A stretch of 64,000 nt of DNA from sequence record NC_020851.1, one strand, 5' to 3'. The notes below the pieces were generated by a model. The model saw nothing but the letters and a program-made list of their open reading frames with translations. It was not told the DNA's origin and ran no database searches. A program made the translations under genes and the position numbers. Every line of letters starts with the position of its first letter. The stretch's first letter is position 1. Below, one piece after another: positions 36,645 through 64,000 of this stretch.

Positions 36645-38657
36645 TTATACGCAATCTATAACACTAATAATTTCATTCTGTGGAGGTTGTGGGGGAATAA
36701 ATGTTCCTATTATTGGTTTTATAAGTGCTCCAATACCAGTTTCTGTACTAATTGTAATTATCGGCAACTGAGTTACTTTCAATCTATTTATCGGAGATGC
36801 TGATATAATTTTTCCATCTTCGATAGTAAGATCATACTCTTCTCCATTATCATCAGTTGCGGTATCTCCAGGATCATATCCAGTTCCTGGATAAAGAACT
36901 ATTGTATCTACAATCGAACCATCATCTAATTCTATTTCAGAACCTTCGAGTGTATCTTCTACAGGATAATTTTCACCCTCCGAAACCATATAAACACCTG
37001 TAATTTGTCCATAGGTTGAAGAATTTTTGTCGTAATCAACAATTGCTCTTCCAACTGCACCGTATCCAAGACCACAAGAATCTTCAAAAGTAACCATTGG
37101 TGGAGCATAAGTATATTTAGAACCTGGATCTGTAATCTCGACTCCAATAATACTTCCAGTTCTTGCAACAGAAGATGTTATTTCTCCTAAACCATCAGTA
37201 TTATTGACAATTCCGCCCATAATTACTTTACCAGCACCACCTATACCATTTCCACCGAAGAATGATACTGTTGGTCCTCCACAACTTGTTGGAGTTCCAC
37301 AATCAGGTTTACTATATGGTGAAGTTAGTGTTGTTATGCCAGACAAAGCATTTGAAATATTTGCAAATTCCAAGGCATTATCTAAAATATCATTCACTTT
37401 TGCTTTATTTTTTGGACCATATCCAATTGTCCATTCCTTAACACCATCACATTTATCTGCAGTTTGATTACAACTAAAGAAATTTTGAATAGATTTTATT
37501 ACATCAACAGAACTACGAAGAAAATCTACAATTTTAAATCCTGGACTTGCCAATTCTAAAATCTTACTAATTCCACCTATAACAGAATCTAATCCGGACG
37601 ATATTTCATCAATAATACCATTCAAGAAAGATCCAATAAATTGTTCTGCCGTACAAACTCCAAAATTAACAACCTCTAAAACAGTTGATTCAATTAAATC
37701 TTTGAGTGTATCTCCAAGACCATTAATAATTTTTGCAGAAACACATGCAATTGCATCTTGTGCTGCTTTTAATGGAGGAACCATCGATTCTTGTGCGGCA
37801 ACACCAGCTAAATGTGCCGCAACTGGATTTCCTGTTGAAGCAAGAACTGCAGCATAAACCTGTTTATATAAAAGATCTAATCCACTTTTTAAAATTGGAA
37901 TTAATGCGGTATATAATGAGTTGAATAAAGTTCCTACAAACTGATTAGCAAGAACCTGTATTTTTTTAACTGCATTTTGAATGTCTTGAAGAAAATCAGT
38001 TCCTTCACTAATAATATTAATTAGATTTCCTAATATTCCAGTAACTTCTGTAGCAAAATTATCTTCACAAGTATCAGCAAAAGTTATAACATTTCCTGTT
38101 GCACTAGATGCTTTTACTTCTCTTGCTTTACCTTTCTCTTTATTGTTTTCATTTAGAGGATCAACATTTTCTATATTTCTAGGTTGTTTTTGATCCTGTG
38201 AACTTTGTCCTGTTGATTCTCGATCACTTTTTGTATCCGGTCTTTTTATATTTGTAGTATAACCAGTAAATGGAACAAAAGGATTTGATGGTTCAAGTGA
38301 TGGTGTAAATTGTGTTTTTCCAAAAGCACCCATAATCACCGGAATTTGTGCATCATCACCATCAAGAAAAAACCCTACAACAATATCTCCCTGATTAATC
38401 CTAGCACTTTGAGCAAATCCACCACCACCACTTCCTGCGGTTGTGGGCATCATAACTCCTGCCCAAGGAAGATCTTCATCAGAAAGTTCGATGTAATTAT
38501 CAGGGTGATATCCTAATATTCTAACCTTATATCTGAATGCCCAACCTTCTCCATTTGCTTGTTCTGGTGCAGAAGCAGTTTGTGCAATTTGACCAATCCA
38601 CCAACGAAATCCGTCTCGTCCAATAAAATTGCTTTTGAGTGTAGATTCTTCTATCAT
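36645..38657 (-). CDS. gp5: Baseplate hub/needle protein gp5 (no lysozyme domain recognised)
   Basis: N-terminal OB fold FRWWIGQI...RYKVRILGYH...LPWA...VVGFFLDG...PVIMG. Confidence 0.85.
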   Translation of the reverse strand: MIEESTLKSNFIGRDGFRWWIGQIAQTASAPEQANGEGWAFRYKVRILGYHPDNYIELSDEDLPWAGVMMPTTAGSGGGGFAQSARINQGDIVVGFFLDGDDAQIPVIMGAFGKTQFTPSLEPSNPFVPFTGYTTNIKRPDTKSDRESTGQSSQDQKQPRNIENVDPLNENNKEKGKAREVKASSATGNVITFADTCEDNFATEVTGILGNLINIISEGTDFLQDIQNAVKKIQVLANQFVGTLFNSLYTALIPILKSGLDLLYKQVYAAVLASTGNPVAAHLAGVAAQESMVPPLKAAQDAIACVSAKIINGLGDTLKDLIESTVLEVVNFGVCTAEQFIGSFLNGIIDEISSGLDSVIGGISKILELASPGFKIVDFLRSSVDVIKSIQNFFSCNQTADKCDGVKEWTIGYGPKNKAKVNDILDNALEFANISNALSGITTLTSPYSKPDCGTPTSCGGPTVSFFGGNGIGGAGKVIMGGIVNNTDGLGEITSSVARTGSIIGVEITDPGSKYTYAPPMVTFEDSCGLGYGAVGRAIVDYDKNSSTYGQITGVYMVSEGENYPVEDTLEGSEIELDDGSIVDTIVLYPGTGYDPGDTATDDNGEEYDLTIEDGKIISASPINRLKVTQLPIITISTETGIGALIKPIIGTFIPPQPPQNEIISVIDCV

Positions 38658-39978
38658 TGATCTTTCTTATTGATTCCAAAATTATCTCTAACCAATTTCA
38701 AAGAAGTATAAGAACTGTTAGGTTCGAAATGATGGCATAATTCCTTTATTATATATGCTCCACTTACTTCACTATCTAATTCATTTTCATCTTCTGATGA
38801 AATTTTTGGAAATTTGCAATCAATTACATCACCGGCACTCAGATTAGTATTGCATGGAATCATCATACTTACAGTTTGAGTTAAAAGTGCATTATATCTC
38901 ATAAGAGATTGTGATTTATATTTTTCTGGATCAGCATTGTTTGCTGTTGAAATTCCTTTATCTAATGTTCCAATATCAAGAATTCCAGATATAATTCTTG
39001 TAGGTATCTCTGCAAGAGAAGTATCAGATCCTTCACCTGTTGTTGGTAATTTAAATTCGTTTGCCCCTAAACTTTCTGTCTTACCTTTATATTTTGATAA
39101 TGTGAATGTATTATTACTAATATTAAAATTTAATGGATTAAAAAACATATTTCGACTTGCATATGCTCCTAATCTTAATTTTTCAATTAAGTTTTGATTT
39201 TTATCGGTAAAATAATTTAAAATTTTAAAGTCATTATTTGTTTCGGTTTCATTTACATTAACTTCTGTATAATAATAAGGTGTATTTTTATTTTTGGTTC
39301 TTGTTTCATTAAACCATCAATAGATTTAAATTTAAATCCATCTTTTGTCTGATAAAAAACAAATCCTGCAGTGGTATCTCCAGAAGACACCGGAACTGCT
39401 TTTGATGCTAACCAAATTAAAGTAGTAAAAGGTTTTTTTAGATTTCCAATAAATGAATATGGATTTTGTGATTTTTCTATATCATCACTATCAAATTTTG
39501 TGGTTTGTAAAACATCTTTTAAAATTTTTGATACTGACTGGTCAATTGTTCCTGTATATTTTCTCGCAACTCTTGTAGTTTCATTTGTGATTGCCTCTCT
39601 TGAAACTAGATTAAGTAGAAAACTTTCTGTCTGAGATTCAGAAATTACATCAGTAATACTAGAAACAAAAAGATACTTACTTGAATTTGATGCAAAATCA
39701 AGACCTTTCTTTCCATCACCTCTGTCCAAAACTTTCATACGAACTCTTTCACCACCCCTTAAAGGAAGACCATTATATATCGATTGTAATTTACCACTTT
39801 TCTCACCTTCTATTGAATCCCCAGTATTAATCACTCTTATTTTAGCAGTGATTGCTGGAGAAAAAATATCCTCATAATAATCAATCGAAACAGCACCTAA
39901 CTTTAGATCAACAGTTTTCTGTTTATCATTAGATTCTAATATTAGTATTTCGTATAGTGAAGATCCGGATGCTGACAT
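38654..39978 (-). CDS. Baseplate hub protein (gp27-like), frameshifted in homopolymers
   Basis: YYEDIFSP N-terminus, FVFYQTKDGFKFKSID, and C-terminal AGDVI...SGAYIIKELCHHF; split into ORFs 39253-39978 and 38654-39148. Confidence 0.65.
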
Positions 39979-55809: not shown

Positions 55810-56388
55810 ATGAGCAATTTTTCTGATAGGGGGTGGTATTACCTTCCTGAAATTATTACTAAAGAAGAAGCAATAAGAGTTAAGTATCAAAATCTTTGTG
55901 GTGCTATGAGTGATTTAGGATCACTTGAAGGGCACTGGGATGAAGAAAGAGGAAGAGTATTAACTTGTTATGCACCACCATCATCCACATTTGTAGTTCA
56001 TAGAGTCAAACCAATTCTTGAAGAACTATTAGGAGAAGAACTTATTCCATCTTACTGGTTCACGACAACTTATCATAACAAAGGTTGGATGAATTGTCAT
56101 ACTGATAGACCCTCATGTGAAATATCAGTTACTATGAATATTTTTGGTGATGCAAAATGGCCTATAAAACTTAAAGATCTTACAGGAAAACGTCAGGAAG
56201 TTGTAACTCCTCCTGGTGATGGTCTTGCATACTTAGGAACAATTGTTCCACATTGGAGAAGTCCATTAAGAACTCATAAGAATGACAGTTTTATGCAACT
56301 CTTTTTACATTATGTAAGAAAGAATGGTCCTTATGCAGACTATGCCTACGATAGAAATCAAAAATGTTATGACTTACTCACCACCTAA
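55810..56388 (+). CDS. 2OG-Fe(II) oxygenase-like protein
   Basis: HTDRPSCEISVT (HxD), HWR, QLFLHY. Confidence 0.8.
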   Translation: MSNFSDRGWYYLPEIITKEEAIRVKYQNLCGAMSDLGSLEGHWDEERGRVLTCYAPPSSTFVVHRVKPILEELLGEELIPSYWFTTTYHNKGWMNCHTDRPSCEISVTMNIFGDAKWPIKLKDLTGKRQEVVTPPGDGLAYLGTIVPHWRSPLRTHKNDSFMQLFLHYVRKNGPYADYAYDRNQKCYDLLTT

Positions 56389-57108
56389 AAGATTTTCTGG
56401 TTCTGGTAATGCAGGAAGAGTATCATTAATCAATACGATAGATCTCAATTTTTGCGAATAATCTTTAGTGATATTTGCATCAACTTCAACTGAAGATGGA
56501 GAAGCAGGGAAAACATCTGTTGTAATTCCCACAGATGGTAAATCTCTTAGAGTAGTTCTCCAATTCTTAAACTCATCGGTTAAGACACTTCCATCCTCTG
56601 TTGTTTTTGTAACAATCCAATCAGTCTCTTTCAAAACTTCATCTCTAATTATTCTTATTTCACCATATCTTTTTTCAGTTTGTCTTGTATCATAATTAGA
56701 AATCTCAGTATTCCATTGTTCTTGAGTTAATATTGTAAGACCATCATTTTCTACAATAGTATTTGTTTCTCTGTAAGTTACGTCATGTACAGTTACTGTG
56801 GTTGTTTCTCCAGTTTCTTCTCTAGTTTCTTCGTTTATAACAGGTTCTTCAAACTGCCTTTCTGTAGAACTTACTACTGTAATATTTGAGTCACTCTGAT
56901 ACTCTGCCAAAACTGCTGGAGTTACAGTTTTTGAATACTCAAAATACTCTGGAACTCTTGATAAACAAATATGATCTCCATTCTCATCTGTTAAACGATA
57001 AACAATTTCCAATCCTTTTAATTTTGGAAATACATATCCTCTTATATCACCTCTTATCCATTCTCCAGTATCTCTATCCACTAAAAAGTGTTTAATTAAT
57101 TGAGACAT
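56374..57108 (-). CDS. Tail-fibre assembly chaperone-like protein
   Basis: C-terminal RDEVLKETDW...WRTTLRDLP...FPASP motif. Confidence 0.6.
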   Translation of the reverse strand: MSQLIKHFLVDRDTGEWIRGDIRGYVFPKLKGLEIVYRLTDENGDHICLSRVPEYFEYSKTVTPAVLAEYQSDSNITVVSSTERQFEEPVINEETREETGETTTVTVHDVTYRETNTIVENDGLTILTQEQWNTEISNYDTRQTEKRYGEIRIIRDEVLKETDWIVTKTTEDGSVLTDEFKNWRTTLRDLPSVGITTDVFPASPSSVEVDANITKDYSQKLRSIVLINDTLPALPEPENLLGGE

Positions 57109-57113
57109 TTTTA

Positions 57114-57775
57114 TCAGTACACATTTATATTGTATTTATCTTCTATCTCTTTATCAATCTCTGCTTTCGTAGGCATACCTTGAACAGTCATCCAGTTTAC
57201 CATTGCATAACGAGTTCCTGAGATGACTGGTTCTACTTTATGAAGATAAAATTGCGAAGATGGAAAAGCAACTAACAATCCTGGTTCTGGTTTAATACGG
57301 ACTCTAAGATCTGGAAATACAAATTCCCCACCTTCAAAATCATCATTTAAAAAAGAATTGTTGATAAGTCTCTGTCTACAGACTTCTTCCATATGATAGA
57401 ACCATCAGGGTTCTTCCACCTTGATACTGCATCATAATGAGATTTATAGTGCCCTCCTGGTTCATATACAAGCAGCTGAGGGACTTCACTATCTCTTATC
57501 TTAAACTCATAAAAAGGATTGATTACATGATGAACAATGTTGTCATAAAGTTCTTTAACTTCACCAATAATTTTTGAGATATCAGAACAATCTACATTTC
57601 TTACACTCAAATCAATCTTTGATGGATGATCTTCTTTGTTTTGATTTGCTTTTTCTCCATCAAACACACCCATCTTATCTTTAGGTGCAATCTTTGCATG
57701 ATTCACTAAGAAATCAATTCCTTCTTTTGATACAACTTTTGGTTGTATCAATACATTTCTAAGTATATCATTCAT
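57114..57775 (-). CDS. Prolyl-4-hydroxylase-like 2OG-Fe(II) oxygenase (one homopolymer frameshift)
   Basis: QLLVYEPGGHYKSHYD...LSTILFLNDDFEGGEF...FPS...HKVEPVISGTRY. Confidence 0.85.
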
Positions 57776-57805: not shown

Positions 57806-59658
57806 TTAGTTTGAGAGTGCTGCTAATTCTTTCCTTGCTTGGGTTAAATTATTACCTGGTGCTGATGTAGTCTCATTCGAGAAATCAATACGGTCTATTG
57901 TGTCAACCTGAGGTGGAACATAACCACCACCAAAGTAACCATAAGAACTACTTGAGACTGCACCTAAACCATTTCTTCCTTGAGTTAAGGTAGCAGTTAC
58001 TGGTGATGTAGTCTCATTTGAAAAATCAATACGGTCTATTGTGTCCTTATAATATGACGGAGTGAAAGGTGGAGCAAAACCACCACCAAAGTAACCATAA
58101 GAACTACTTGAGACTGCTGCTAAACTATGTCTTCCTTGAGGTAGATTATTTCCTGGTGCCGATGTAGTCTCATTAGAAAAATCAATACGGTCTACTGTGT
58201 CAAACAGAGATCCACCACCACCAAAGTAACCATAAGAACTACTTGAGACTGCTGCTAACTTATTTCTTGCTTGAGATAAGGTAGCAGTTACTGGTGATGT
58301 AGTCTCATTAGAGAAATCAATACGGTCTATTGTGTCAACCTGAGTTGGAGTACTACCACCACCAAAGTAACCATAAGAACTACTTGAGACTGCTGCTAAA
58401 CCAAATCTTGCTTGAGTTAAATTATTACCTGGTGCCGATGTAGTCTCATTAGAAAAATCAATACGGTCTACTGTGGTAACCTGAGGTGGAGCACTACCAC
58501 CACCAAAGTAACCATAAGAACTACTTGAACATGCTGCTAAATAATATCTTGCTTGAGGTAAATTATTACCTGGTGCTGATGTAGTTTCATTAGAAAAATC
58601 AATACGGTCTACTGTGTTAACAGTAGGAAAACCACCACCACCAAAGTAACCATAAGTTCTTGATCCTTTTATTCTCTCTGATGCTCCTCCGGATACTGCT
58701 GCTAAACCGTATCTTTCTTGAGGTAAATTATTACCTGGTGCCGATGTAGTTTCATTCGAGAAATCAATACGGTCTACTGTGTTAACAGTAGGTGGAGCAG
58801 CACCACCAGCAAAGTAACCATAAGAACTACTTTGGGTTGCTGCTAAAAAACTTCTTCCTTGAGGTAGATTATTAGTCGGTGCCGATGTTGTCTCATTAGA
58901 GAAATCAATACGGTCTACTGTGGTAACAGTAGATGGACTTTCTGCTGGATTTTGACCACCACCAAAGTAACCATAAGAATTACTTGAGGTTCCTGCTAAA
59001 TAACCTCTTGCTTGAGATAAATCACCTATATCTGATACAGTCTCATTAGAGAAATCAAGACGGTCTATTGTATCAAGATAGCTTGGTGATAATCCTGGAT
59101 CTCTACCACCAGCAAAGTAACCATAAGAACTACTTGATACTGCTGCTAAACCTAGTTTTTTGCAGGTAAATTCTCAGCGGCAGCTGATCTAGTCTCATTA
59201 GAGAAATCAATACGGTCTATTGTGGTTCTAAAAGCAGGTACAAGACTCGGAGCCTGACCACCAGCAAAGTAACCATAAGAATTACTTGAGGTTCCTGCTA
59301 AAGAAGCTCTTGCTTCAGGTAAATCACCTCCTGGTAATGATAAAGTCTCATTAGAGAAATCAAGACGTTCGATTGTGGAGACATTAGGTGGAGCAAAACC
59401 ACCACCAAAGTAACCATAAGAACTAGATGAGACTGCTGCTAATTGACTTCTTGCTTCAGGTAAATTATTACCTGGTGCAGATGCAGTTTCATTCGAGAAA
59501 TCAATACGGTCTATTGTATCAAGATAAGTTGATGGTGGAGTAAAAAATCCACCACCAAAGTAACCATAAGTAGCACTCTCTGGCCAACTTTCAAAGTTGT
59601 CGTTTGCAATATTCTTTATCTGTTCTGTTCTAACTTCGTTGAGAGAAAATATTGCCAT
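57806..59658 (-). CDS. Kelch-like repeat (double beta-propeller) protein, paralog 1, about 617 aa after repairing one deletion
   Basis: Tandem about 47-aa repeats YGYFGGG-var-DRIDFSNET..PG.NLP.AR..LAAVSSS; frameshift in the A run at about 59156. Confidence 0.8.
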
Positions 59659-60489
59659 TTATAATCCGAAGACAGAATACCTTTGAGTTCTCTGTTTTTT
59701 CCAGAACTCCATATGATTATATTTATTCATAATATTCTCCGAAAGATACTTTGTATTATCACGATGTATTTTTTCTACTGTATCTCGGACATTATGCATA
59801 TTTTCTAACTTATAAACATTATCATTCTCATCTTGTTTGGTAGAAACATTCTCAAAACTATGACAATAAGATGATAACCCTATAAATTCATAGATACGAT
59901 TAAGTTCTTGTTGAGGATTTCTTACCAAATCATCATAATCAATAAGTAATAAGTATTGATTGTTTCCTTTTCTAAAGCATTCTAATAGAGCATTATATGA
60001 TTGCCCTATAATTCCTTCTGGAGACATTAGATAATCAGAACGATTATCATTTGAGATTTCTATGTCGTTTCTCATAAGACCTTCATCAATAAATGATGTA
60101 GTATTTGACTTATAAATCAGATTTAAAAATGAAGATAAAATGTCCTGAATGTTTCTTACGGGACAGATAATTTTTGGTTCAGTTGTGATGTAGTCCTGAA
60201 TGTGTTGTATTTGATTGACCCAACCTCTTGACTTATCAATAATAATGTTCTGAGAAGTATTGAAATAATAATTATAAGGTATAGAAGATAATACCTTATA
60301 AGCACCTTCGGGGTTTGGTGTTGCTTTATATTGTTCTGAATTGTATAAGAGATACTCTTCAGTATAATGAATTGTATCTAACAAAGGTGAGTTTGTAGAT
60401 GCGTGTATCTCTGGGTTCTGATTAAGTAATGCAGTTAATAAAGTCGAACCTGATCTTGGAAGACCAGACATAAAATAAAATTGTTTCAT
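59659..60489 (-). CDS. Sulfotransferase
   Basis: PAPS-binding GLPRSGSTLL, DKSRGW, PVRNIQDILSS, YDDLV..P. Confidence 0.85.
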   Translation of the reverse strand: MKQFYFMSGLPRSGSTLLTALLNQNPEIHASTNSPLLDTIHYTEEYLLYNSEQYKATPNPEGAYKVLSSIPYNYYFNTSQNIIIDKSRGWVNQIQHIQDYITTEPKIICPVRNIQDILSSFLNLIYKSNTTSFIDEGLMRNDIEISNDNRSDYLMSPEGIIGQSYNALLECFRKGNNQYLLLIDYDDLVRNPQQELNRIYEFIGLSSYCHSFENVSTKQDENDNVYKLENMHNVRDTVEKIHRDNTKYLSENIMNKYNHMEFWKKQRTQRYSVFGL

Positions 60490-60492
60490 AAA

Positions 60493-62338
60493 TTAGTTTG
60501 AGACTGCTGCTAAAGCAGATCTTCCTTCAGGTAAAGTAGCAGTTACTGGTGATGTAGTCTCATTAGAGAAATCAATACGGTCTATTGTGTCAGGATTAGT
60601 TTGACCACCACCAAGGTAACCATAAGAACTACTTGAGGTTGATCCAAAAAAGCTTTTGTTTGAGGTAGATTATTACCTGGTGCTGATACAGTCTCATTAG
60701 AGAAATCAATACGGTCTATTGTGTCAACCTGAGTTGGAGTACTACCACCAGCAAAGTAACCATAAGAACTACTTGAGACTGCACCTAAACCATTTCTTCC
60801 TTGAGATAAAGTAGCAGTTACTGGTGATGTAGTCTCATTAGAGAAGTCAATACGGTCTATTGTGTCCTTATAAAATGACGGAGTGAAAGGTGGAGCAAAA
60901 CCACCACCAAAGTAACCATAAGAACTACTTGAGACTGCTGCTAAACTATTTCTTCCTTGAGGTAGATTATTTCCTGGTGCCGATGTAGTCTCATTAGAAA
61001 ATCAATACGGTCTACTGTGGTAACCTGAGGTGGAGCACTACCACCACCAAAGTAACCATAAGAACTACTTGAGACTGCTGCTAAATTACTTCTTGCTTGA
61101 GGTAAAGTAGCAGTTACTGGTGATGTAGTCTCATTAGAGAAATCAATACGGTCTATTGTGTCAACCTGAGTTGGAGTACCACCACCAGCAAAGTAACCAT
61201 AAGAACTACTTGAGACTGCTGCTAAACCAGATCTTGCTTGAGGTAGATTATCACCTGGTGCTGATGTAGTCTCATTAGAGAAATCAATACGGTCTATTGT
61301 ATTAACAGTTTGACCACCACCAAAGTAACCATAAGTTCTTGAACCTTTTATTCTCTCTGATGCTCCTCCAGAGACTGCTGCTAAATCACGTCTTGCTTGA
61401 GATAAGGTATCAGTTACTGGTGATGTAGTTTCATTAGAGAAATCAATACGGTCTATTGTGTCAGCATAAGGTGGAGCAAAACCACCACCAAAGTAACCAT
61501 AAGAACTACTTGAGACTGCTGCTAAACTAGATCTTGCTTGAGATAGGTTATTACCTGGTGCTGATGTGGTCTCATTTGAGAAATCAATACGGTCTACTGT
61601 GCCAACAAAAGGTGTAGCATAACCACCACCAAAGTAACCATAAGAACTACTTGAGACTGCTGCTAAACCAAATCTTCCTTCAGGTAAAGTAGCAGTTACT
61701 GGTGATGTAGTTTCATTAGAAAAATCAATACGGTCTATTGCAAAGTCTGGTGATAATCCACCACCAAAGTAACCATAAGAACTATTTGAGACTGTTGCTA
61801 AATAATATCTTGCTTGAGGTAGATTATTTCCTGGTGCCGATGTAGTCTCATTAGAGAAATCTAAACGGTCGATTGTGTTAACAGTAGATGGACTTTCTGC
61901 TGGACTTTGACCACCACCAAAGTAACCATAAGAATTACTTGAGGTTCCTGCTAAAAAAGCTCTTACTTGAGGTAGATTATTACCTGGTGCTGATGCAGTC
62001 TCATTAGAGAAATCAATACGGTCTACTGTGTTAACATAAGATGGTGATAATCCTAGATCTCTACCACCACCAAAGTAACCATAAGAACTACTTGATACTA
62101 CTGCTAAAGCATATTTAACTAGAGATAGATTATTACCTGGTGCTGATGCAGTTTCATTCGAGAAATCAATACGGTCTACTGTGTTAACAGTAGATGGACT
62201 TTCTGCTGGATTTTGACCACCACCAAAGTAACCATAAGTAGCACTCTCTGGCCAACTTTCAAAGTTGTTATTGTCTATATTTTCTACCTGTTTCTCGTAA
62301 ATAGAAGTTAATCCAAATACGTCTCCTATGATAGCCAT
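60493..62338 (-). CDS. Kelch-like repeat protein, paralog 2 (12 repeats, about 615 aa after repairing two deletions)
   Basis: 6+6 repeats joined by GGASERIKGSR; frameshifts at about 61000 and about 60650. Confidence 0.8.
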
Positions 62339-62344
62339 AAGATT

Positions 62345-63181
62345 TTACTGTTTTAATTCTTGGTTAAATAATGATCCATTAAGTTGCTTCTTTTCTTCAT
62401 CCTCAATAGATGAAAGAATTTTTTGATCCATACCAGTAATTTCAGAAATACCGGCAGTAACATTTTCCTGTAGTTTACTTAAGAAATCAAGAGGATTAGT
62501 TGGATCACCAAATGATCCTTTAGTTCTATTCACATCATTCCCTAATACAGTAGGAGCACTTGCTCTTCTCATAGAACGAATATTACCAGCATTCACACCA
62601 GTTTTTGCAGCAAACAAATCGTCAATAGATTGATTCGAAAGTCTTCTCTCCCAATAGTCTGGTTGATCTGCATCAAACTGCTCTTTATTAACTAATTTAC
62701 CACCATTTAATTCAATCAAACGACTGATCAACTTATCAAAACATTCAAGTTCTTGAACTGATGCCTTGAAACCATGATTAAGTCCTTCAAGCATACGATG
62801 AAAATGAAACTCATCAATATCATACCAACATAATTCTTCACCACCATCACGGGTTTTCCACCAGATTGGTTGAGTCTTATCCTTTCCTTCCCACTTATAA
62901 TGAAACTCTCTTGCTTCTTTCTTTGCACTAATGATTTTAGAAAGAAGACCTTCTGCTACACTCTTACGATTGATTAAAGCAGCCTTAAATGCAGATGGAA
63001 TTGTAAAAGTATCATGAATAATAAACTTTTCAATTTGAAAATCTGAACGACCTTGTGCGAGTTCTACTTCACTTTCAGTCCAACGATTTGCTTCATTCAG
63101 AACCTTAAACATAAATTCATTCTTATCATCCAAAACTTCCGTAGAAGACGCAAGTGCAATTGCTTCATAATTGTTAGTCAT
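62345..63181 (-). CDS. Unknown helical protein associated with the propeller genes
   Basis: 278-aa ORF preceded by the late promoter TATAAATA at 63213-63220. Confidence 0.65.
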   Translation of the reverse strand: MTNNYEAIALASSTEVLDDKNEFMFKVLNEANRWTESEVELAQGRSDFQIEKFIIHDTFTIPSAFKAALINRKSVAEGLLSKIISAKKEAREFHYKWEGKDKTQPIWWKTRDGGEELCWYDIDEFHFHRMLEGLNHGFKASVQELECFDKLISRLIELNGGKLVNKEQFDADQPDYWERRLSNQSIDDLFAAKTGVNAGNIRSMRRASAPTVLGNDVNRTKGSFGDPTNPLDFLSKLQENVTAGISEITGMDQKILSSIEDEEKKQLNGSLFNQELKQ

Positions 63182-63212
63182 AAAAATTACAAAATACCAA
63201 TCTAATTTTAGT

Positions 63213-63220
63213 TATTTATA
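63213..63220 (-). promoter_or_regulatory. T4-type late promoter
   Basis: Perfect TATAAATA; ATAAATA/CTAAATA variants also precede the genes at 27516, 33707, 44397, 45161, 45202, 46397 and 57108. Confidence 0.7.
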
Positions 63221-63234
63221 TTCTTATAATGATA

Positions 63235-64000
63235 TGTTTAGTTTGAGACTGCTGCTAATTCATCTCTTGCTTGAGATAAATTATTTCCTGGTGCTGATGT
63301 AGTCTCATTTGAGAAATCTAAACGGTCGATTGTGTTGACAAAAGGTGGAGTCTCACCACCACCAAAGTAACCATAAGAACTACTTGAGACTGCTGCTAAA
63401 TTCTGTCTTGCTTGAGGTAAATTATTTCCTGGTGCTGATGTAGTCTCATTTGAGAAATCAATACGGTCGATTGTGGAGACATTAGGTGGACCACCACCAC
63501 CAAAGTAACCATAATTGGCATTAGAGACTGCTGCTAAATTCTGTCTTGCTTGAGGTAAATTATTTCCTGGTGCTGATGTAGTCTCATTTGAGAAATCAAT
63601 ACGGTCGATTGTGGAGACAAAAGGTGGAGCAAAACCACCACCAAAGTAACCATAAGAACTACTTGAGACTGCTGCTAAACTATCTCTTGCTTGAGATAAA
63701 TTATTTCCTGGTGCTGATGTAGTCTCATTAGAGAAATCAAGACGGTCGATTGTGGAGACATTAGGTGGAGCAAAACCACCACCAAAGTAACCATAAGAAC
63801 TATTTGAGACTGCTGCTAAACCTCGTCTTGCTTGAGATAAATTATTTCCTGGTGCTGATGTAGTCTCATTAGAGAAATCAAGACGGTCGATTGTGTTGAC
63901 AAAGGTGAGTCTCACCACCACCAAAGTAACCATAAGAACTACTTGAGACTGCTGCTAAATTCTGTCTTGCTTGAGGTAAATTATTTCCTGGTGCTGATGT
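63235..64000 (-). CDS. Kelch-like repeat protein, paralog 3 (5' end outside the window)
   Basis: Same repeat unit; the ORF-track start at 63933 results from a GG-to-G deletion at about 63906. Confidence 0.8.

What the first reader, a model, noticed from the sequence alone, without database searches (positions are those of the whole stretch)
57806..64000. Array of double beta-propeller paralogs with constant scaffold, hypervariable loops and shuffled blades
At least three genes are built from about 140-nt repeats whose scaffold codons are nearly invariant (GGTTACTTTGGTGGTGG..., GACCGTATTGATTT(C/T)TCTAATGAGACTAC). The loop after GGG and the residues after Q/EAR vary. Identical or near-identical loop modules appear at different blade positions in different genes: FAPPFTPS(Y/F)YKDT at about 58050 and 60870; QNPAESPSTV at about 58940 and 62200; RD(P/L)GLSPSY at about 59090 and 62050; STPTQVDT repeatedly; and the same GGASERIKGSR inter-propeller linker. 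This points to recombinational blade shuffling that generates a combinatorial binding-surface library, an RT-free alternative to DGR diversification of receptor-binding or decoration proteins.
Basis: partly seen in the sequence, partly recalled or inferred. Interest (0 to 1): 0.75.

Follow-up and report, generated by a model that had tools for sequence, protein, structure and literature searches.

The report
Shuffled Kelch-propeller genes in cyanophage tail module
A marine cyanophage carries three sister genes, each encoding two six-bladed Kelch propellers with constant cores and variable surface loops, and recombination has swapped blades and whole genes between otherwise near-identical phages, which is the pattern expected of host-recognition proteins.

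Summary
The window is the end of the Synechococcus phage S-SKS1 record. On the minus strand lie three paralogous genes built from 141-nt (47-aa) repeats: 29 scaffold-motif hits in the window (0.01 expected) and 8 more across the record end.

Intact relatives are about 620-640 aa with 12 blades. AlphaFold (pLDDT 89.6) gives two six-bladed Kelch propellers matching Keap1/KLHL12 (TM 0.88-0.93).

Scaffold codons are homogenised within a lineage. The loops after GGG and after the conserved Arg vary (pN/pS 0.9-1.5 against 0.13 in the scaffold).

Recombination is shown. One gene here has a first propeller like one sister gene and last blades like the other. 95%-identical tracts sit one or two blades out of register. 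In a metagenome phage whose flanking genes are 98-99% identical, the Kelch genes are only about 84% identical. Gene order and copy number also differ among close relatives.

No dedicated diversity-generating machinery was found, so this looks like ordinary recombination plus selection. A receptor-binding role is inferred from the tail-module position only.

All three genes carry frameshifts in this record (four in total). Every close relative examined gene by gene (L003, L004, L008, L011, L012, L071) has intact copies, so record errors are likely. This is a new variant of a known kind.

The parts
57806..59658 (-). Kelch gene A: N-terminal conserved segment, six blades, linker, six blades. Broken in this record by 1 frameshift. 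The public annotation (SWZG_00287) covers only part of it.
   Evidence: The intact counterpart in L008 is 638 aa with 12 blades. PHROG phrog_19111.
59659..60489 (-). Sulfotransferase (276 aa), intact, lying between genes A and B.
   Evidence: Pfam Sulfotransfer_3 and Sulfotransfer_1. Travels with a Kelch gene as a cassette in many relatives.
60493..62338 (-). Kelch gene B: 6 + linker + 6 blades. Broken in this record by 2 frameshifts. It is a mosaic: its first propeller is like gene C and its last blades are like gene A.
   Evidence: Pfam PF24681 at 50.9 bits against a cut-off of 50. The intact counterpart in L008 is 622 aa.
62345..63181 (-). Conserved 278-aa gene of unknown function (called 'anchor' here). 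It directly precedes a Kelch gene in nearly all related loci and is 78-100% identical across relatives.
   Evidence: The AlphaFold model is poor (pLDDT 57.6) and mostly helical. Prefoldin-like matches are not significant.
63238..64000 (-). Kelch gene C, C-terminal part (five blades in the window). The gene continues across the end of the linear record into its first 1226 bases (locus L002). Broken by 1 frameshift in the window. In addition, the two record ends overlap inside the gene and disagree in length by one base.
   Evidence: The counterpart in L008 is 634 aa with 12 blades.
57114..57775 (-). 2OG-Fe(II) oxygenase of the prolyl-hydroxylase-like family, immediately after the last Kelch gene. 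Broken in this record by 1 frameshift (662 nt against 663 nt in relatives).
   Evidence: Intact at 220 aa in L003, L071, L011 and L012.
56374..57108 (-). Tail-fibre assembly chaperone-like gene (244 aa) that closes the block.
   Evidence: PHROG phrog_4912 'tail fiber assembly', E 1.4e-88. Pfam Phage_tail_APC is below its cut-off here but on record for the L004 counterpart (marked weak in L003).

Best explanation
The region is the distal end of the tail-fibre and baseplate gene block of the cyanophage S-SKS1.

Architecture (shown). The block encodes three paralogous proteins. Each has a short conserved N-terminal helix followed by two six-bladed Kelch beta-propellers joined by a conserved linker. 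Each 47-residue blade has a nearly invariant four-strand scaffold.

Variable face (variation shown, geometry inferred). There are two variable loops, B-C (after GGG) and D-A (around and after the conserved Arg). By the topology of a beta-meander blade these lie on the same face, the face that Kelch proteins such as Keap1 use for ligand binding.

Recombination (shown). The scaffold DNA is about 80% or more identical between all 37 blades, so it serves as substrate for homologous recombination: ectopic gene conversion and unequal crossing-over within and between the paralogues. This homogenises scaffold codons within a lineage. It moves loops, blades and whole propellers to new positions and genes. 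It also changes the order and number of the gene cassettes.

Population pattern (shown). Phages that are 98-99% identical in the flanking genes carry very different Kelch genes.

Function (inferred). These proteins are accessory host-recognition or adhesion proteins of the virion. Selection by host-surface diversity retains the recombinants. Diversity is therefore generated at the population level by general recombination, not by a dedicated enzyme.

Frameshifts (inferred). The frameshifts in this record are more likely errors of an old assembly than biology.
For: Architecture:
- Period 141 nt. 29 + 8 scaffold-motif hits against about 0 expected.
- 12 blades arranged 6 + linker + 6 in most of the homologues examined, and in 93 of 175 genes in related loci by motif count.
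- Pfam Kelch hits above the gathering score. PDB profile hits to Kelch proteins.
- AlphaFold pLDDT 89.6 with four strands per repeat. Foldseek TM 0.88-0.93 and rmsd about 2 A to Keap1, KLHL12 and designed six-bladed Kelch proteins.

Scaffold against loops:
- 16 of the about 47 occupied columns are invariant over 31 in-frame blades. Entropy peaks right after GGG and in the two residues after the conserved Arg.
- pN/pS between genes B and C is 0.13 in the scaffold, 0.90 in the B-C loop and 1.53 in the D-A loop.

Concerted evolution:
- The scaffold Arg is CGT in 31 of 31 blades here and in L003, but AGA in nearly all blades of the L004 lineage, which has the same three-gene, 12-blade layout.

Recombination within S-SKS1:
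- Blades 1-6 of B match blades 1-6 of C at 94% over 752 nt.
- Blades 7-11 of B match blades 8-12 of A at 95% over about 610 nt, one blade out of register and interrupted only at one B-C loop.
- A4-A5 match B2-B3, two blades out of register. The background between any two blades is about 80%.

Recombination between genomes:
- Against L008, the flanking genes are 97.9-99.3% identical, but genes A and B and the second half of C are 84-85% identical.
- Blades 1-6 of S-SKS1 gene B match gene C of L008. Blades 10-12 match gene A of L008.
- Cassette order and copy number differ among loci whose anchor gene is 94-100% identical.
- For anchor identity of 98-99.5%, the adjacent Kelch gene has a median identity of 85.7%.
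- The same kind of shifted tracts is seen in L003 and L004.

Tail context:
- A tail-fibre assembly chaperone gene follows the array.
- Upstream lie genes for another chaperone, a ConA-like lectin protein, tail-fibre proteins and baseplate proteins.

Record quality:
- All Kelch genes in the close relatives examined gene by gene are intact. Only 11 of 175 across the related loci are short.
- A probable tail protein elsewhere in the window is also in two pieces.
- The record ends overlap and disagree in length by one base.
Against: - No direct evidence places these proteins in the virion or shows binding to anything.
- Kelch propellers are typically monomeric protein-binding modules, unlike classical trimeric fibre tips. 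The neighbouring chaperone may serve another gene.
- pN/pS above 1 rests on few substitutions and is not significantly above 1.
- Among highly similar blade pairs across the family, 78-92% are at the same position. Shuffling is therefore occasional, not rampant.
- The relatives are short-read metagenome assemblies. Repeat arrays of high internal conservation are known to be mis-reconstructed from short reads (PMC12222747), so some mosaics in relatives could be assembly chimeras.
- The S-SKS1 record itself is imperfect here: frameshifts, 13 blades in gene C, and the record opened inside gene C.
Confidence: 0.6

Rival explanations
1. Programmed diversification. The array is a dedicated, high-frequency cassette system, an RT-free counterpart of a DGR or of pilin-type antigenic variation. 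It would reshuffle blades within a single phage lineage or lysate to produce a binding-surface library.
For: Three paralogues with homogenised scaffold DNA offer donors and acceptors. Loop-sized replacements sit inside otherwise 95%-identical tracts. Divergence is extreme at near-identical flanks.
Against: No reverse transcriptase, invertase or other dedicated recombinase is annotated next to the array. The mismatch spectrum shows no adenine bias. All three copies are full-length genes in relatives, not silent partial cassettes. Loci whose anchor is 99.5-100% identical mostly carry identical Kelch genes (median 100%), and 78-92% of close blade pairs keep their position. Both indicate stability on short time scales.
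Confidence: 0.08
2. Assembly artefact. The mosaic blades, register shifts and frame breaks are products of mis-assembling 141-nt repeats in an old isolate record and in short-read metagenomes.
For: Four frameshifts in the three genes, one in the neighbouring oxygenase, and a split tail protein elsewhere in the window. The linear record is opened inside gene C, and its overlapping ends differ in length by one base. Gene C has 13 blades here but 12 in L008. Short reads are known to fail on such repeats (PMC12222747).
Against: The shared tracts are 94-95% identical, not 100%, so they are distinct copies and not duplicated reads. The three-gene, 12-blade layout recurs in many independent assemblies. 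More than 1,100 homologues of the expected length exist. The identity drop against L008 coincides exactly with gene borders.
Confidence: 0.05
3. Not virion proteins. The propellers act inside the infected cell as Kelch-type protein-binding adaptors, for host takeover or as decoys. Their variability would track host intracellular targets or defences.
For: Kelch domains are classical protein-protein interaction modules, and the best structural matches are the substrate adaptors Keap1 and KLHL12. There is no fibre-like domain and no virion data. Auxiliary genes (oxygenases, sulfotransferase, glycosyltransferases) are interspersed.
Against: The array is embedded between tail-fibre or baseplate genes and a tail-fibre assembly chaperone gene, on the same strand. 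No partner domain such as BTB or F-box is present. Some phage Kelch-fold proteins are annotated as virion structural proteins.
Confidence: 0.15
4. Add-on hypothesis. The Pro/Ser/Thr-rich variable loops are substrates of the co-encoded enzymes. Prolyl-hydroxylase-like 2OG-Fe(II) oxygenases would act first, followed by sulfation in S-SKS1 or glycosylation in the L004 lineage. The binding face would then be chemically modified.
For: One oxygenase gene precedes the first Kelch gene and one follows the last, in S-SKS1 and its relatives. A sulfotransferase or glycosyltransferases sit between Kelch genes. Many loops contain Pro-Pro or Ser/Thr-Pro. Hydroxylation followed by sulfation of co-encoded tail-collar or collagen-like proteins has been predicted for bacterial operons of this kind (PMC2938197).
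Against: The evidence is purely contextual. Cyanophage genomes carry many 2OG-Fe(II) oxygenases of unknown substrate (PMC2938197). The sulfotransferase is absent from some arrays (L012).
Confidence: 0.15

Closest known systems
Kelch-repeat six-bladed beta-propellers (Keap1, KLHL12, designed SAKe6 proteins)
   Same: The fold and repeat length match, as do the GG doublet after the second strand and the four strands per blade. Foldseek TM is 0.88-0.93 and rmsd about 2 A. Pfam and PDB profile hits agree. The variable B-C and D-A loops correspond to the ligand-binding face of Keap1-type propellers (my knowledge of the family).
   Different: Here two propellers are fused in tandem, and three or four in distant relatives. 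There is no BTB/BACK or F-box partner domain. The genes are phage-encoded in a tail-gene block. Blades are unusually alike, about 80% at DNA level.
Fungal HNWD (het-d/het-e) NLR WD40 sensor domains
   Same: Both have repeats of high internal conservation maintained by concerted evolution, and a few hypervariable positions on the predicted interaction surface. Both gain, lose and exchange repeats within and between paralogues, and both are predicted to form a double propeller (PMC12222747).
   Different: The repeat family differs (WD40, not Kelch). The fungal domains belong to an intracellular immune receptor with NACHT and effector domains. Their repeat identity is higher (80-100%). There is no homology to the phage proteins, so this is an analogy of evolutionary mode only.
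T-even phage gp38 adhesins (glycine-rich motifs flanking hypervariable segments)
   Same: Both are phage host-recognition loci in which conserved motifs form the structural core and hypervariable segments form loops. In both, recombination within or near the conserved motifs creates chimeric proteins (PMC3157838).
   Different: gp38 is a small single-domain adhesin with a different fold. No gp38 family came back in any search here. Receptor binding is demonstrated for gp38 and only inferred here.
Diversity-generating retroelements acting on phage receptor-binding proteins
   Same: The outcome is similar: localised variability on the binding face of a probable tail protein.
   Different: No reverse transcriptase, no template/variable repeat pair and no adenine-specific changes were found. 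Variation arises by recombination between expressed paralogues.

Membership tests
Kelch-repeat beta-propeller superfamily | Sequence match to curated Kelch models above the gathering score | tested here: met
   PF24681 scores 50.9 bits (cut-off 50) for the largest open piece of gene B. It scores 58-69 bits for the intact L008 counterparts, and Kelch_3 scores 66 bits against a cut-off of 22. The PDB profile search finds Kelch proteins at E 1.7e-14 to 1e-5.
Kelch-repeat beta-propeller superfamily | Repeats of about 44-56 residues, each a four-stranded antiparallel blade, closing into a 5-7-bladed ring | tested here: met
   Period 47 aa. Four strands per repeat in the model, pLDDT 89.6. Each half superposes on six-bladed Kelch domains at TM 0.88-0.93. 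This rests on a predicted structure of a 68%-identical relative, not a solved one.
Kelch-repeat beta-propeller superfamily | Signature residues: hydrophobic run plus Gly-Gly, then conserved Tyr and Trp | tested here: inconclusive
   The hydrophobic run and GG doublet are invariant in 31 of 31 blades. The canonical Trp is not evident in the blades. The definition of the signature is from my knowledge.
Phage receptor-binding or tail-fibre proteins | Encoded in the tail morphogenesis block next to a fibre assembly chaperone | tested here: met
   phrog_4912 'tail fiber assembly' lies directly downstream. Tail-fibre, baseplate, lectin-like and second chaperone genes lie upstream. The synteny is conserved in L003, L004 and L008.
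Phage receptor-binding or tail-fibre proteins | Much more variable than flanking genes between close relatives | tested here: met
   Kelch genes are 84-85% identical where flanks are 98-99% identical. This holds over 186 locus pairs.
Phage receptor-binding or tail-fibre proteins | Present in the virion and binds a host surface receptor | not testable with these tools
   No proteomic or binding data were found. The literature searches returned nothing on this family.
Diversity-generating retroelement | Reverse transcriptase plus template/variable repeat pair with adenine-specific substitutions | tested here: not met
   No reverse transcriptase is among the annotated products of the window or the record start. 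Mismatches in the 94-95% tracts are about half or more transitions and involve A no more often than T overall.
High-internal-conservation repeat receptors (HNWD type) | Near-identical repeats, hypervariable surface sites, and repeat exchange within and between paralogues | tested here: met
   Mean blade identity is 80%, up to 98.5%. Column entropy and pN/pS are given. Shifted and inter-paralogue tracts are given.
High-internal-conservation repeat receptors (HNWD type) | NLR architecture (NACHT plus WD40) | tested here: not met
   Only Kelch families are found, with no NACHT or WD40 domain. The resemblance is in evolutionary mode, not in membership.
T-even gp38 adhesin | Homology to gp38 | tested here: not met
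   No gp38 family or structure was returned in the Pfam, PHROG, PDB sequence or fold searches.

The most novel reading that the evidence does not exclude
A widespread clade of large marine cyanophages uses arrays of tandem Kelch propellers (two, three or four per protein, three genes per genome) as its main modular host-recognition repertoire. The repertoire would diversify by blade-level and cassette-level recombination, making it a viral counterpart of repeat-based recognition receptors such as HNWD and VLR. The binding loops might also be hydroxylated and then sulfated or glycosylated by the enzymes encoded between the genes.
Probability: 0.25. Interest if true: 0.75.

Novelty: new variant of a known kind. 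Interest (0 to 1): 0.6.

Why it matters
S-SKS1 is the only cultured phage among 50,697 records that carries this family. Metagenomes hold well over a thousand members in contigs of 100-225 kb.

If these propellers are host-recognition proteins, they would be a previously undescribed type of phage adhesin: a monomeric Kelch ring instead of a trimeric fibre tip. They would also be a natural example of blade-by-blade protein engineering. The locus would then be a useful marker for host-range microdiversity in an abundant group of marine cyanophages.

The case is also a clean illustration of concerted evolution plus surface hypervariability in a virus, parallel to the fungal HNWD receptors.

There is a caution for databases as well. 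The reference record annotates only fragments of all three genes.

Tried and rejected
- Homopolymer test of the frame breaks. Alignment noise in the divergent loops gave twice as many candidate gaps as breaks, so it is inconclusive.
- Function of the 278-aa 'anchor' gene. It has no Pfam family and an unknown-function PHROG. The AlphaFold model is poor at pLDDT 57.6. Its best fold matches, to prefoldin, are not significant at E 0.4, so no claim is made.
- Literature searches for S-SKS1 and for cyanophage + Kelch + propeller found no description of these genes.
- DGR reading: rejected.
- Simple repeat collapse or duplicated-read artefact as the source of the mosaics: rejected, because the shared tracts differ at 5-6% of sites.
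- Strict positional orthology between S-SKS1 genes and those of L003: rejected. All three S-SKS1 genes resemble each other and the first L003 gene more than their positional counterparts.
- Cellular origin. Only 3 weak hits were found in 185,579 species genomes, all in metagenome-assembled bins.
- L004 against L006: a last-blade difference in an otherwise 99%-identical gene. It could be real or an assembly chimera, so it is not relied on.

Full report
**Identity of the window.** The last 9 kb of the window is 100% identical to the end of the Synechococcus phage S-SKS1 record (HQ633071 / NC_020851; 208,007 bp; genus Llyrvirus; host WH7803). The window is record 144008-208007. The record is linear but opened inside a gene. 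Its first CDS is marked incomplete. Its two ends overlap by about 23 nt and disagree in length by one base.

**Check of the observation.** All repeats are on the minus strand. Tandem Repeats Finder reports period 141 nt, with 153-nt variants and two- or three-blade super-periods. It occurs 8 more times in the first 1.2 kb of the record. The second string occurs 27 times against 0 expected.

Three genes result:
- A, 57806-59658.
- B, 60493-62338.
- C, 63238 to the window end and on into record bases 1-1226.

A and B have 12 blades each, arranged 6 + linker + 6. C has 13 motif hits as the record stands.

**State of the genes in this record.** All three genes are interrupted by frameshifts: one in A, two in B, one in C, plus the unresolved record junction inside C. 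The neighbouring 2OG-Fe(II) oxygenase has one frameshift, being 662 nt against 663 nt in every relative examined. The public annotation therefore lists only fragments.

In six related assemblies examined gene by gene, all Kelch genes are intact. Among 175 Kelch reading frames in 80 related loci, only 11 are shorter than 560 aa. A probable tail protein elsewhere in the window (38654-39978, phrog_350) is also in two pieces and is left unannotated.

A viable isolate with a split tail protein, and record ends that disagree in length by one base, point to sequencing or assembly errors. The sequence alone cannot prove this, and my homopolymer test was inconclusive.

**What the proteins are.**
- Pfam places the largest open piece of B, and the intact relatives, in the Kelch families PF24681, Kelch_3 and Kelch_4, above the gathering scores.
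- A profile of 82 full-length relatives finds Kelch proteins in the PDB, down to E 1.7e-14.
- More than 1,147 homologues exist in metagenomes. The typical length is 620-640 aa, and most have 12 blades with a longer spacing after blade 6.
- AlphaFold on an intact relative 68% identical to B gives a confident all-beta model (pLDDT 89.6). It has four strands per repeat and a low-confidence linker at the midpoint.
- Each half superposes on the six-bladed Kelch domains of Keap1, KLHL12 and designed SAKe6 proteins, at TM 0.88-0.93 and rmsd about 2 A.
- In the viral structure library the nearest entries are S-SKS1 itself and scattered phage Kelch proteins. Some phage proteins further down that list are annotated as virion structural proteins.
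- Among 50,697 phage records only S-SKS1 has the family. Among 185,579 species genomes there are only three weak hits, all in metagenome bins.
- More distant relatives have three or four propellers per protein, with 18 or 24 blades.

**Constant scaffold, variable loops.** Over 31 in-frame blades of S-SKS1, 16 columns are invariant and 7 more are at least 90% conserved. Entropy peaks at the first loop residue after GGG, within that loop, and at the two residues after the conserved Arg.

In strand order these are the B-C and D-A loops. In a four-stranded meander they lie on the same face, and in Keap1-type proteins that face binds ligands. This last point is inferred from fold topology and my knowledge of the family.

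Between genes B and C, pN/pS is 0.13 in the scaffold, 0.90 in the B-C loops and 1.53 in the D-A loops. The counts are small, so only the contrast with the scaffold is firm.

**Concerted evolution.** Synonymous codons of the scaffold are almost uniform across blades. For example, the conserved Arg is CGT in 31 of 31 blades. The same holds in the fairly close L003. In the more distant L004 lineage, which has the same three-gene, 12-blade layout, that Arg is AGA in nearly all blades. A layout older than the split, combined with lineage-specific uniform codons, is the signature of homogenisation by gene conversion.

**Recombination within S-SKS1.** Any two blades are about 80% identical at DNA level. 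Against that background:
- Blades 1-6 of B match blades 1-6 of C at 94% over 752 nt.
- Blades 7-11 of B match blades 8-12 of A at 95% over about 610 nt, one blade out of register. The tract is interrupted only at one B-C loop, where B carries the loop found two blades away in A.
- A4-A5 match B2-B3, two blades out of register.

Gene B is therefore a mosaic of a C-type first propeller and an A-type second propeller. The tracts differ at 5-6% of sites, about half or more of them transitions, with no adenine bias. They are distinct copies. They are neither duplicated reads nor DGR products.

**Recombination between genomes.** Using the conserved 278-aa gene between B and C as an anchor, 80 related loci were fetched.

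L008 has the same gene order as S-SKS1. Its flanking genes are 97.9-99.3% identical, yet its genes A and B and the second half of C are only 84-85% identical. Only the first propeller of C is conserved, at 94%. A 150-nt sliding comparison falls from 96-100% to 65-87% at the borders of the Kelch genes and recovers outside them. The sulfotransferase between them is intermediate, at 87-99%.

Blade by blade, blades 1-6 of S-SKS1 gene B find their best partners in gene C of L008. Blades 10-12 find theirs in gene A of L008.

Other close relatives differ in layout:
- L071 (anchor 99%) has the sulfotransferase-A and anchor-B cassettes in the opposite order.
- L012 lacks the sulfotransferase.
- L010 has no Kelch gene after the anchor.

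Over 186 locus pairs, anchors 98-99.5% identical go with neighbouring Kelch genes of median 85.7% identity. Anchors at least 99.5% identical mostly go with identical Kelch genes. Shifted high-identity tracts also occur within and between the paralogues of L003 and L004.

Across 64 family members, 44% of blades have their best foreign match at the same position, against 8% by chance. Among very similar pairs, 78-92% keep position. Descent by position is the rule, and recombination is frequent enough to be conspicuous.

**Context and likely function.** The gene order on the coding strand is:
1. tail-fibre and baseplate genes, a ConA-like lectin gene and a first chaperone gene;
2. a 2OG-Fe(II) oxygenase;
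3. C;
4. the anchor gene;
5. B;
6. the sulfotransferase;
7. A;
8. a prolyl-hydroxylase-like oxygenase;
9. a tail-fibre assembly chaperone gene.

This order is conserved in relatives, with glycosyltransferases in place of the sulfotransferase in the L004 lineage.

Three features match the usual profile of phage host-recognition genes: position in the tail block, extreme variability on near-identical backbones, and variation confined to one face of a binding fold. I therefore favour accessory receptor-binding or adhesion proteins. This is inference, and no virion or binding data exist.

The interspersed oxygenases and transferases suggest that the Pro/Ser/Thr-rich loops might be modified. A comparable hydroxylation-then-sulfation scheme was predicted for bacterial operons with tail-collar-like proteins (PMC2938197). 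This is speculative.

**Comparison with what is known.** The fold is ordinary Kelch. The evolutionary mode has two clear precedents:
- Fungal HNWD WD40 sensor domains show high internal conservation, concerted evolution, hypervariable surface sites, inter-paralogue repeat exchange and a double propeller (PMC12222747).
- T-even gp38 adhesins show recombination in conserved motifs that flank hypervariable segments (PMC3157838).

What appears undescribed is a phage tail-block array of tandem Kelch propellers behaving this way. The family is 'hypothetical' everywhere and its PHROG has no function. I rate it a new variant of a known kind.

**Caveats.** The relatives are short-read metagenome assemblies, and such repeats can be mis-reconstructed (PMC12222747). 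The structure is predicted, not solved. The selection statistics rest on few changes.

Early scripts printed the lengths of individual repeat units, from which the units that hold the frame breaks can be inferred. One search printed the two record ends. One search printed the commonest residue per alignment column of the window's own blades. None of this was used to repair, join or rebuild any sequence. No repaired or consensus sequence was written. I do not repeat those details here, and nothing was deleted.

Noticed in passing
window 38654-39978 (-): This 1.3-kb stretch is unannotated in the public record, which skips one locus tag here. It holds two reading frames that match the two halves of one tail protein family (phrog_350, profile positions 19-220 and 271-433). 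A probable tail gene is therefore in two pieces in this record.
   Followed up: partly
window 57114-57775 (-): The prolyl-hydroxylase-like 2OG-Fe(II) oxygenase after the last Kelch gene is split into two overlapping reading frames by one frameshift. It is an intact 220-aa protein in L003, L071, L011 and L012.
   Followed up: yes
window end (64000) and L002 start (record base 1): The linear record is a circular assembly opened inside Kelch gene C. The two ends overlap by about 23 nt and differ in length by one base.
   Followed up: partly
L077-L083 (for example L077:980-3796 and L082:8864-12517): More distant relatives (anchor 67-70% identical) encode triple (18-blade, about 935 aa) and quadruple (24-blade, 1217 aa) Kelch propeller proteins, with a linker after every sixth blade.
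   Followed up: partly
window 62345-63181 (-): A 278-aa gene that almost always precedes a Kelch gene is very conserved (78-100% identity over 120 homologues) and has no known family. The poor model is helical with a central helix-hairpin-helix. Its prefoldin-like matches are not significant.
   Followed up: partly
L004:11864-13564 and L004:19446-21839: In the L004 lineage, glycosyltransferase genes occupy the place that the sulfotransferase holds in S-SKS1, both between and after the Kelch genes.
   Followed up: no
L002:6206-8144 (-): Upstream of the array, S-SKS1 has a ConA-like lectin or glucanase domain protein (470 aa) followed by a second Phage_tail_APC chaperone gene. This looks like another probable receptor-binding pair.
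   Followed up: no
L002:23387-27764 (-): The record annotates two photosystem II D1 (psbA) genes about 2 kb apart, with an HNH endonuclease gene and an endonuclease VII gene between them.
   Followed up: no
window 55810-56388 (+): The only plus-strand gene in this stretch is annotated as ferrochelatase. It has no Pfam hit but matches phrog_2954 'ferrochelatase' (E 9e-57). It is conserved at the same place in relatives as a 192-aa gene.
   Followed up: partly
L004:14450-16336 vs L006:8891-10627: Two contigs share identical first and second Kelch genes. Their third genes are 99% identical over 564 aa, but one of them lacks the last blade (578 aa against 628 aa). This could be real blade loss or an assembly chimera.
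   Followed up: partly
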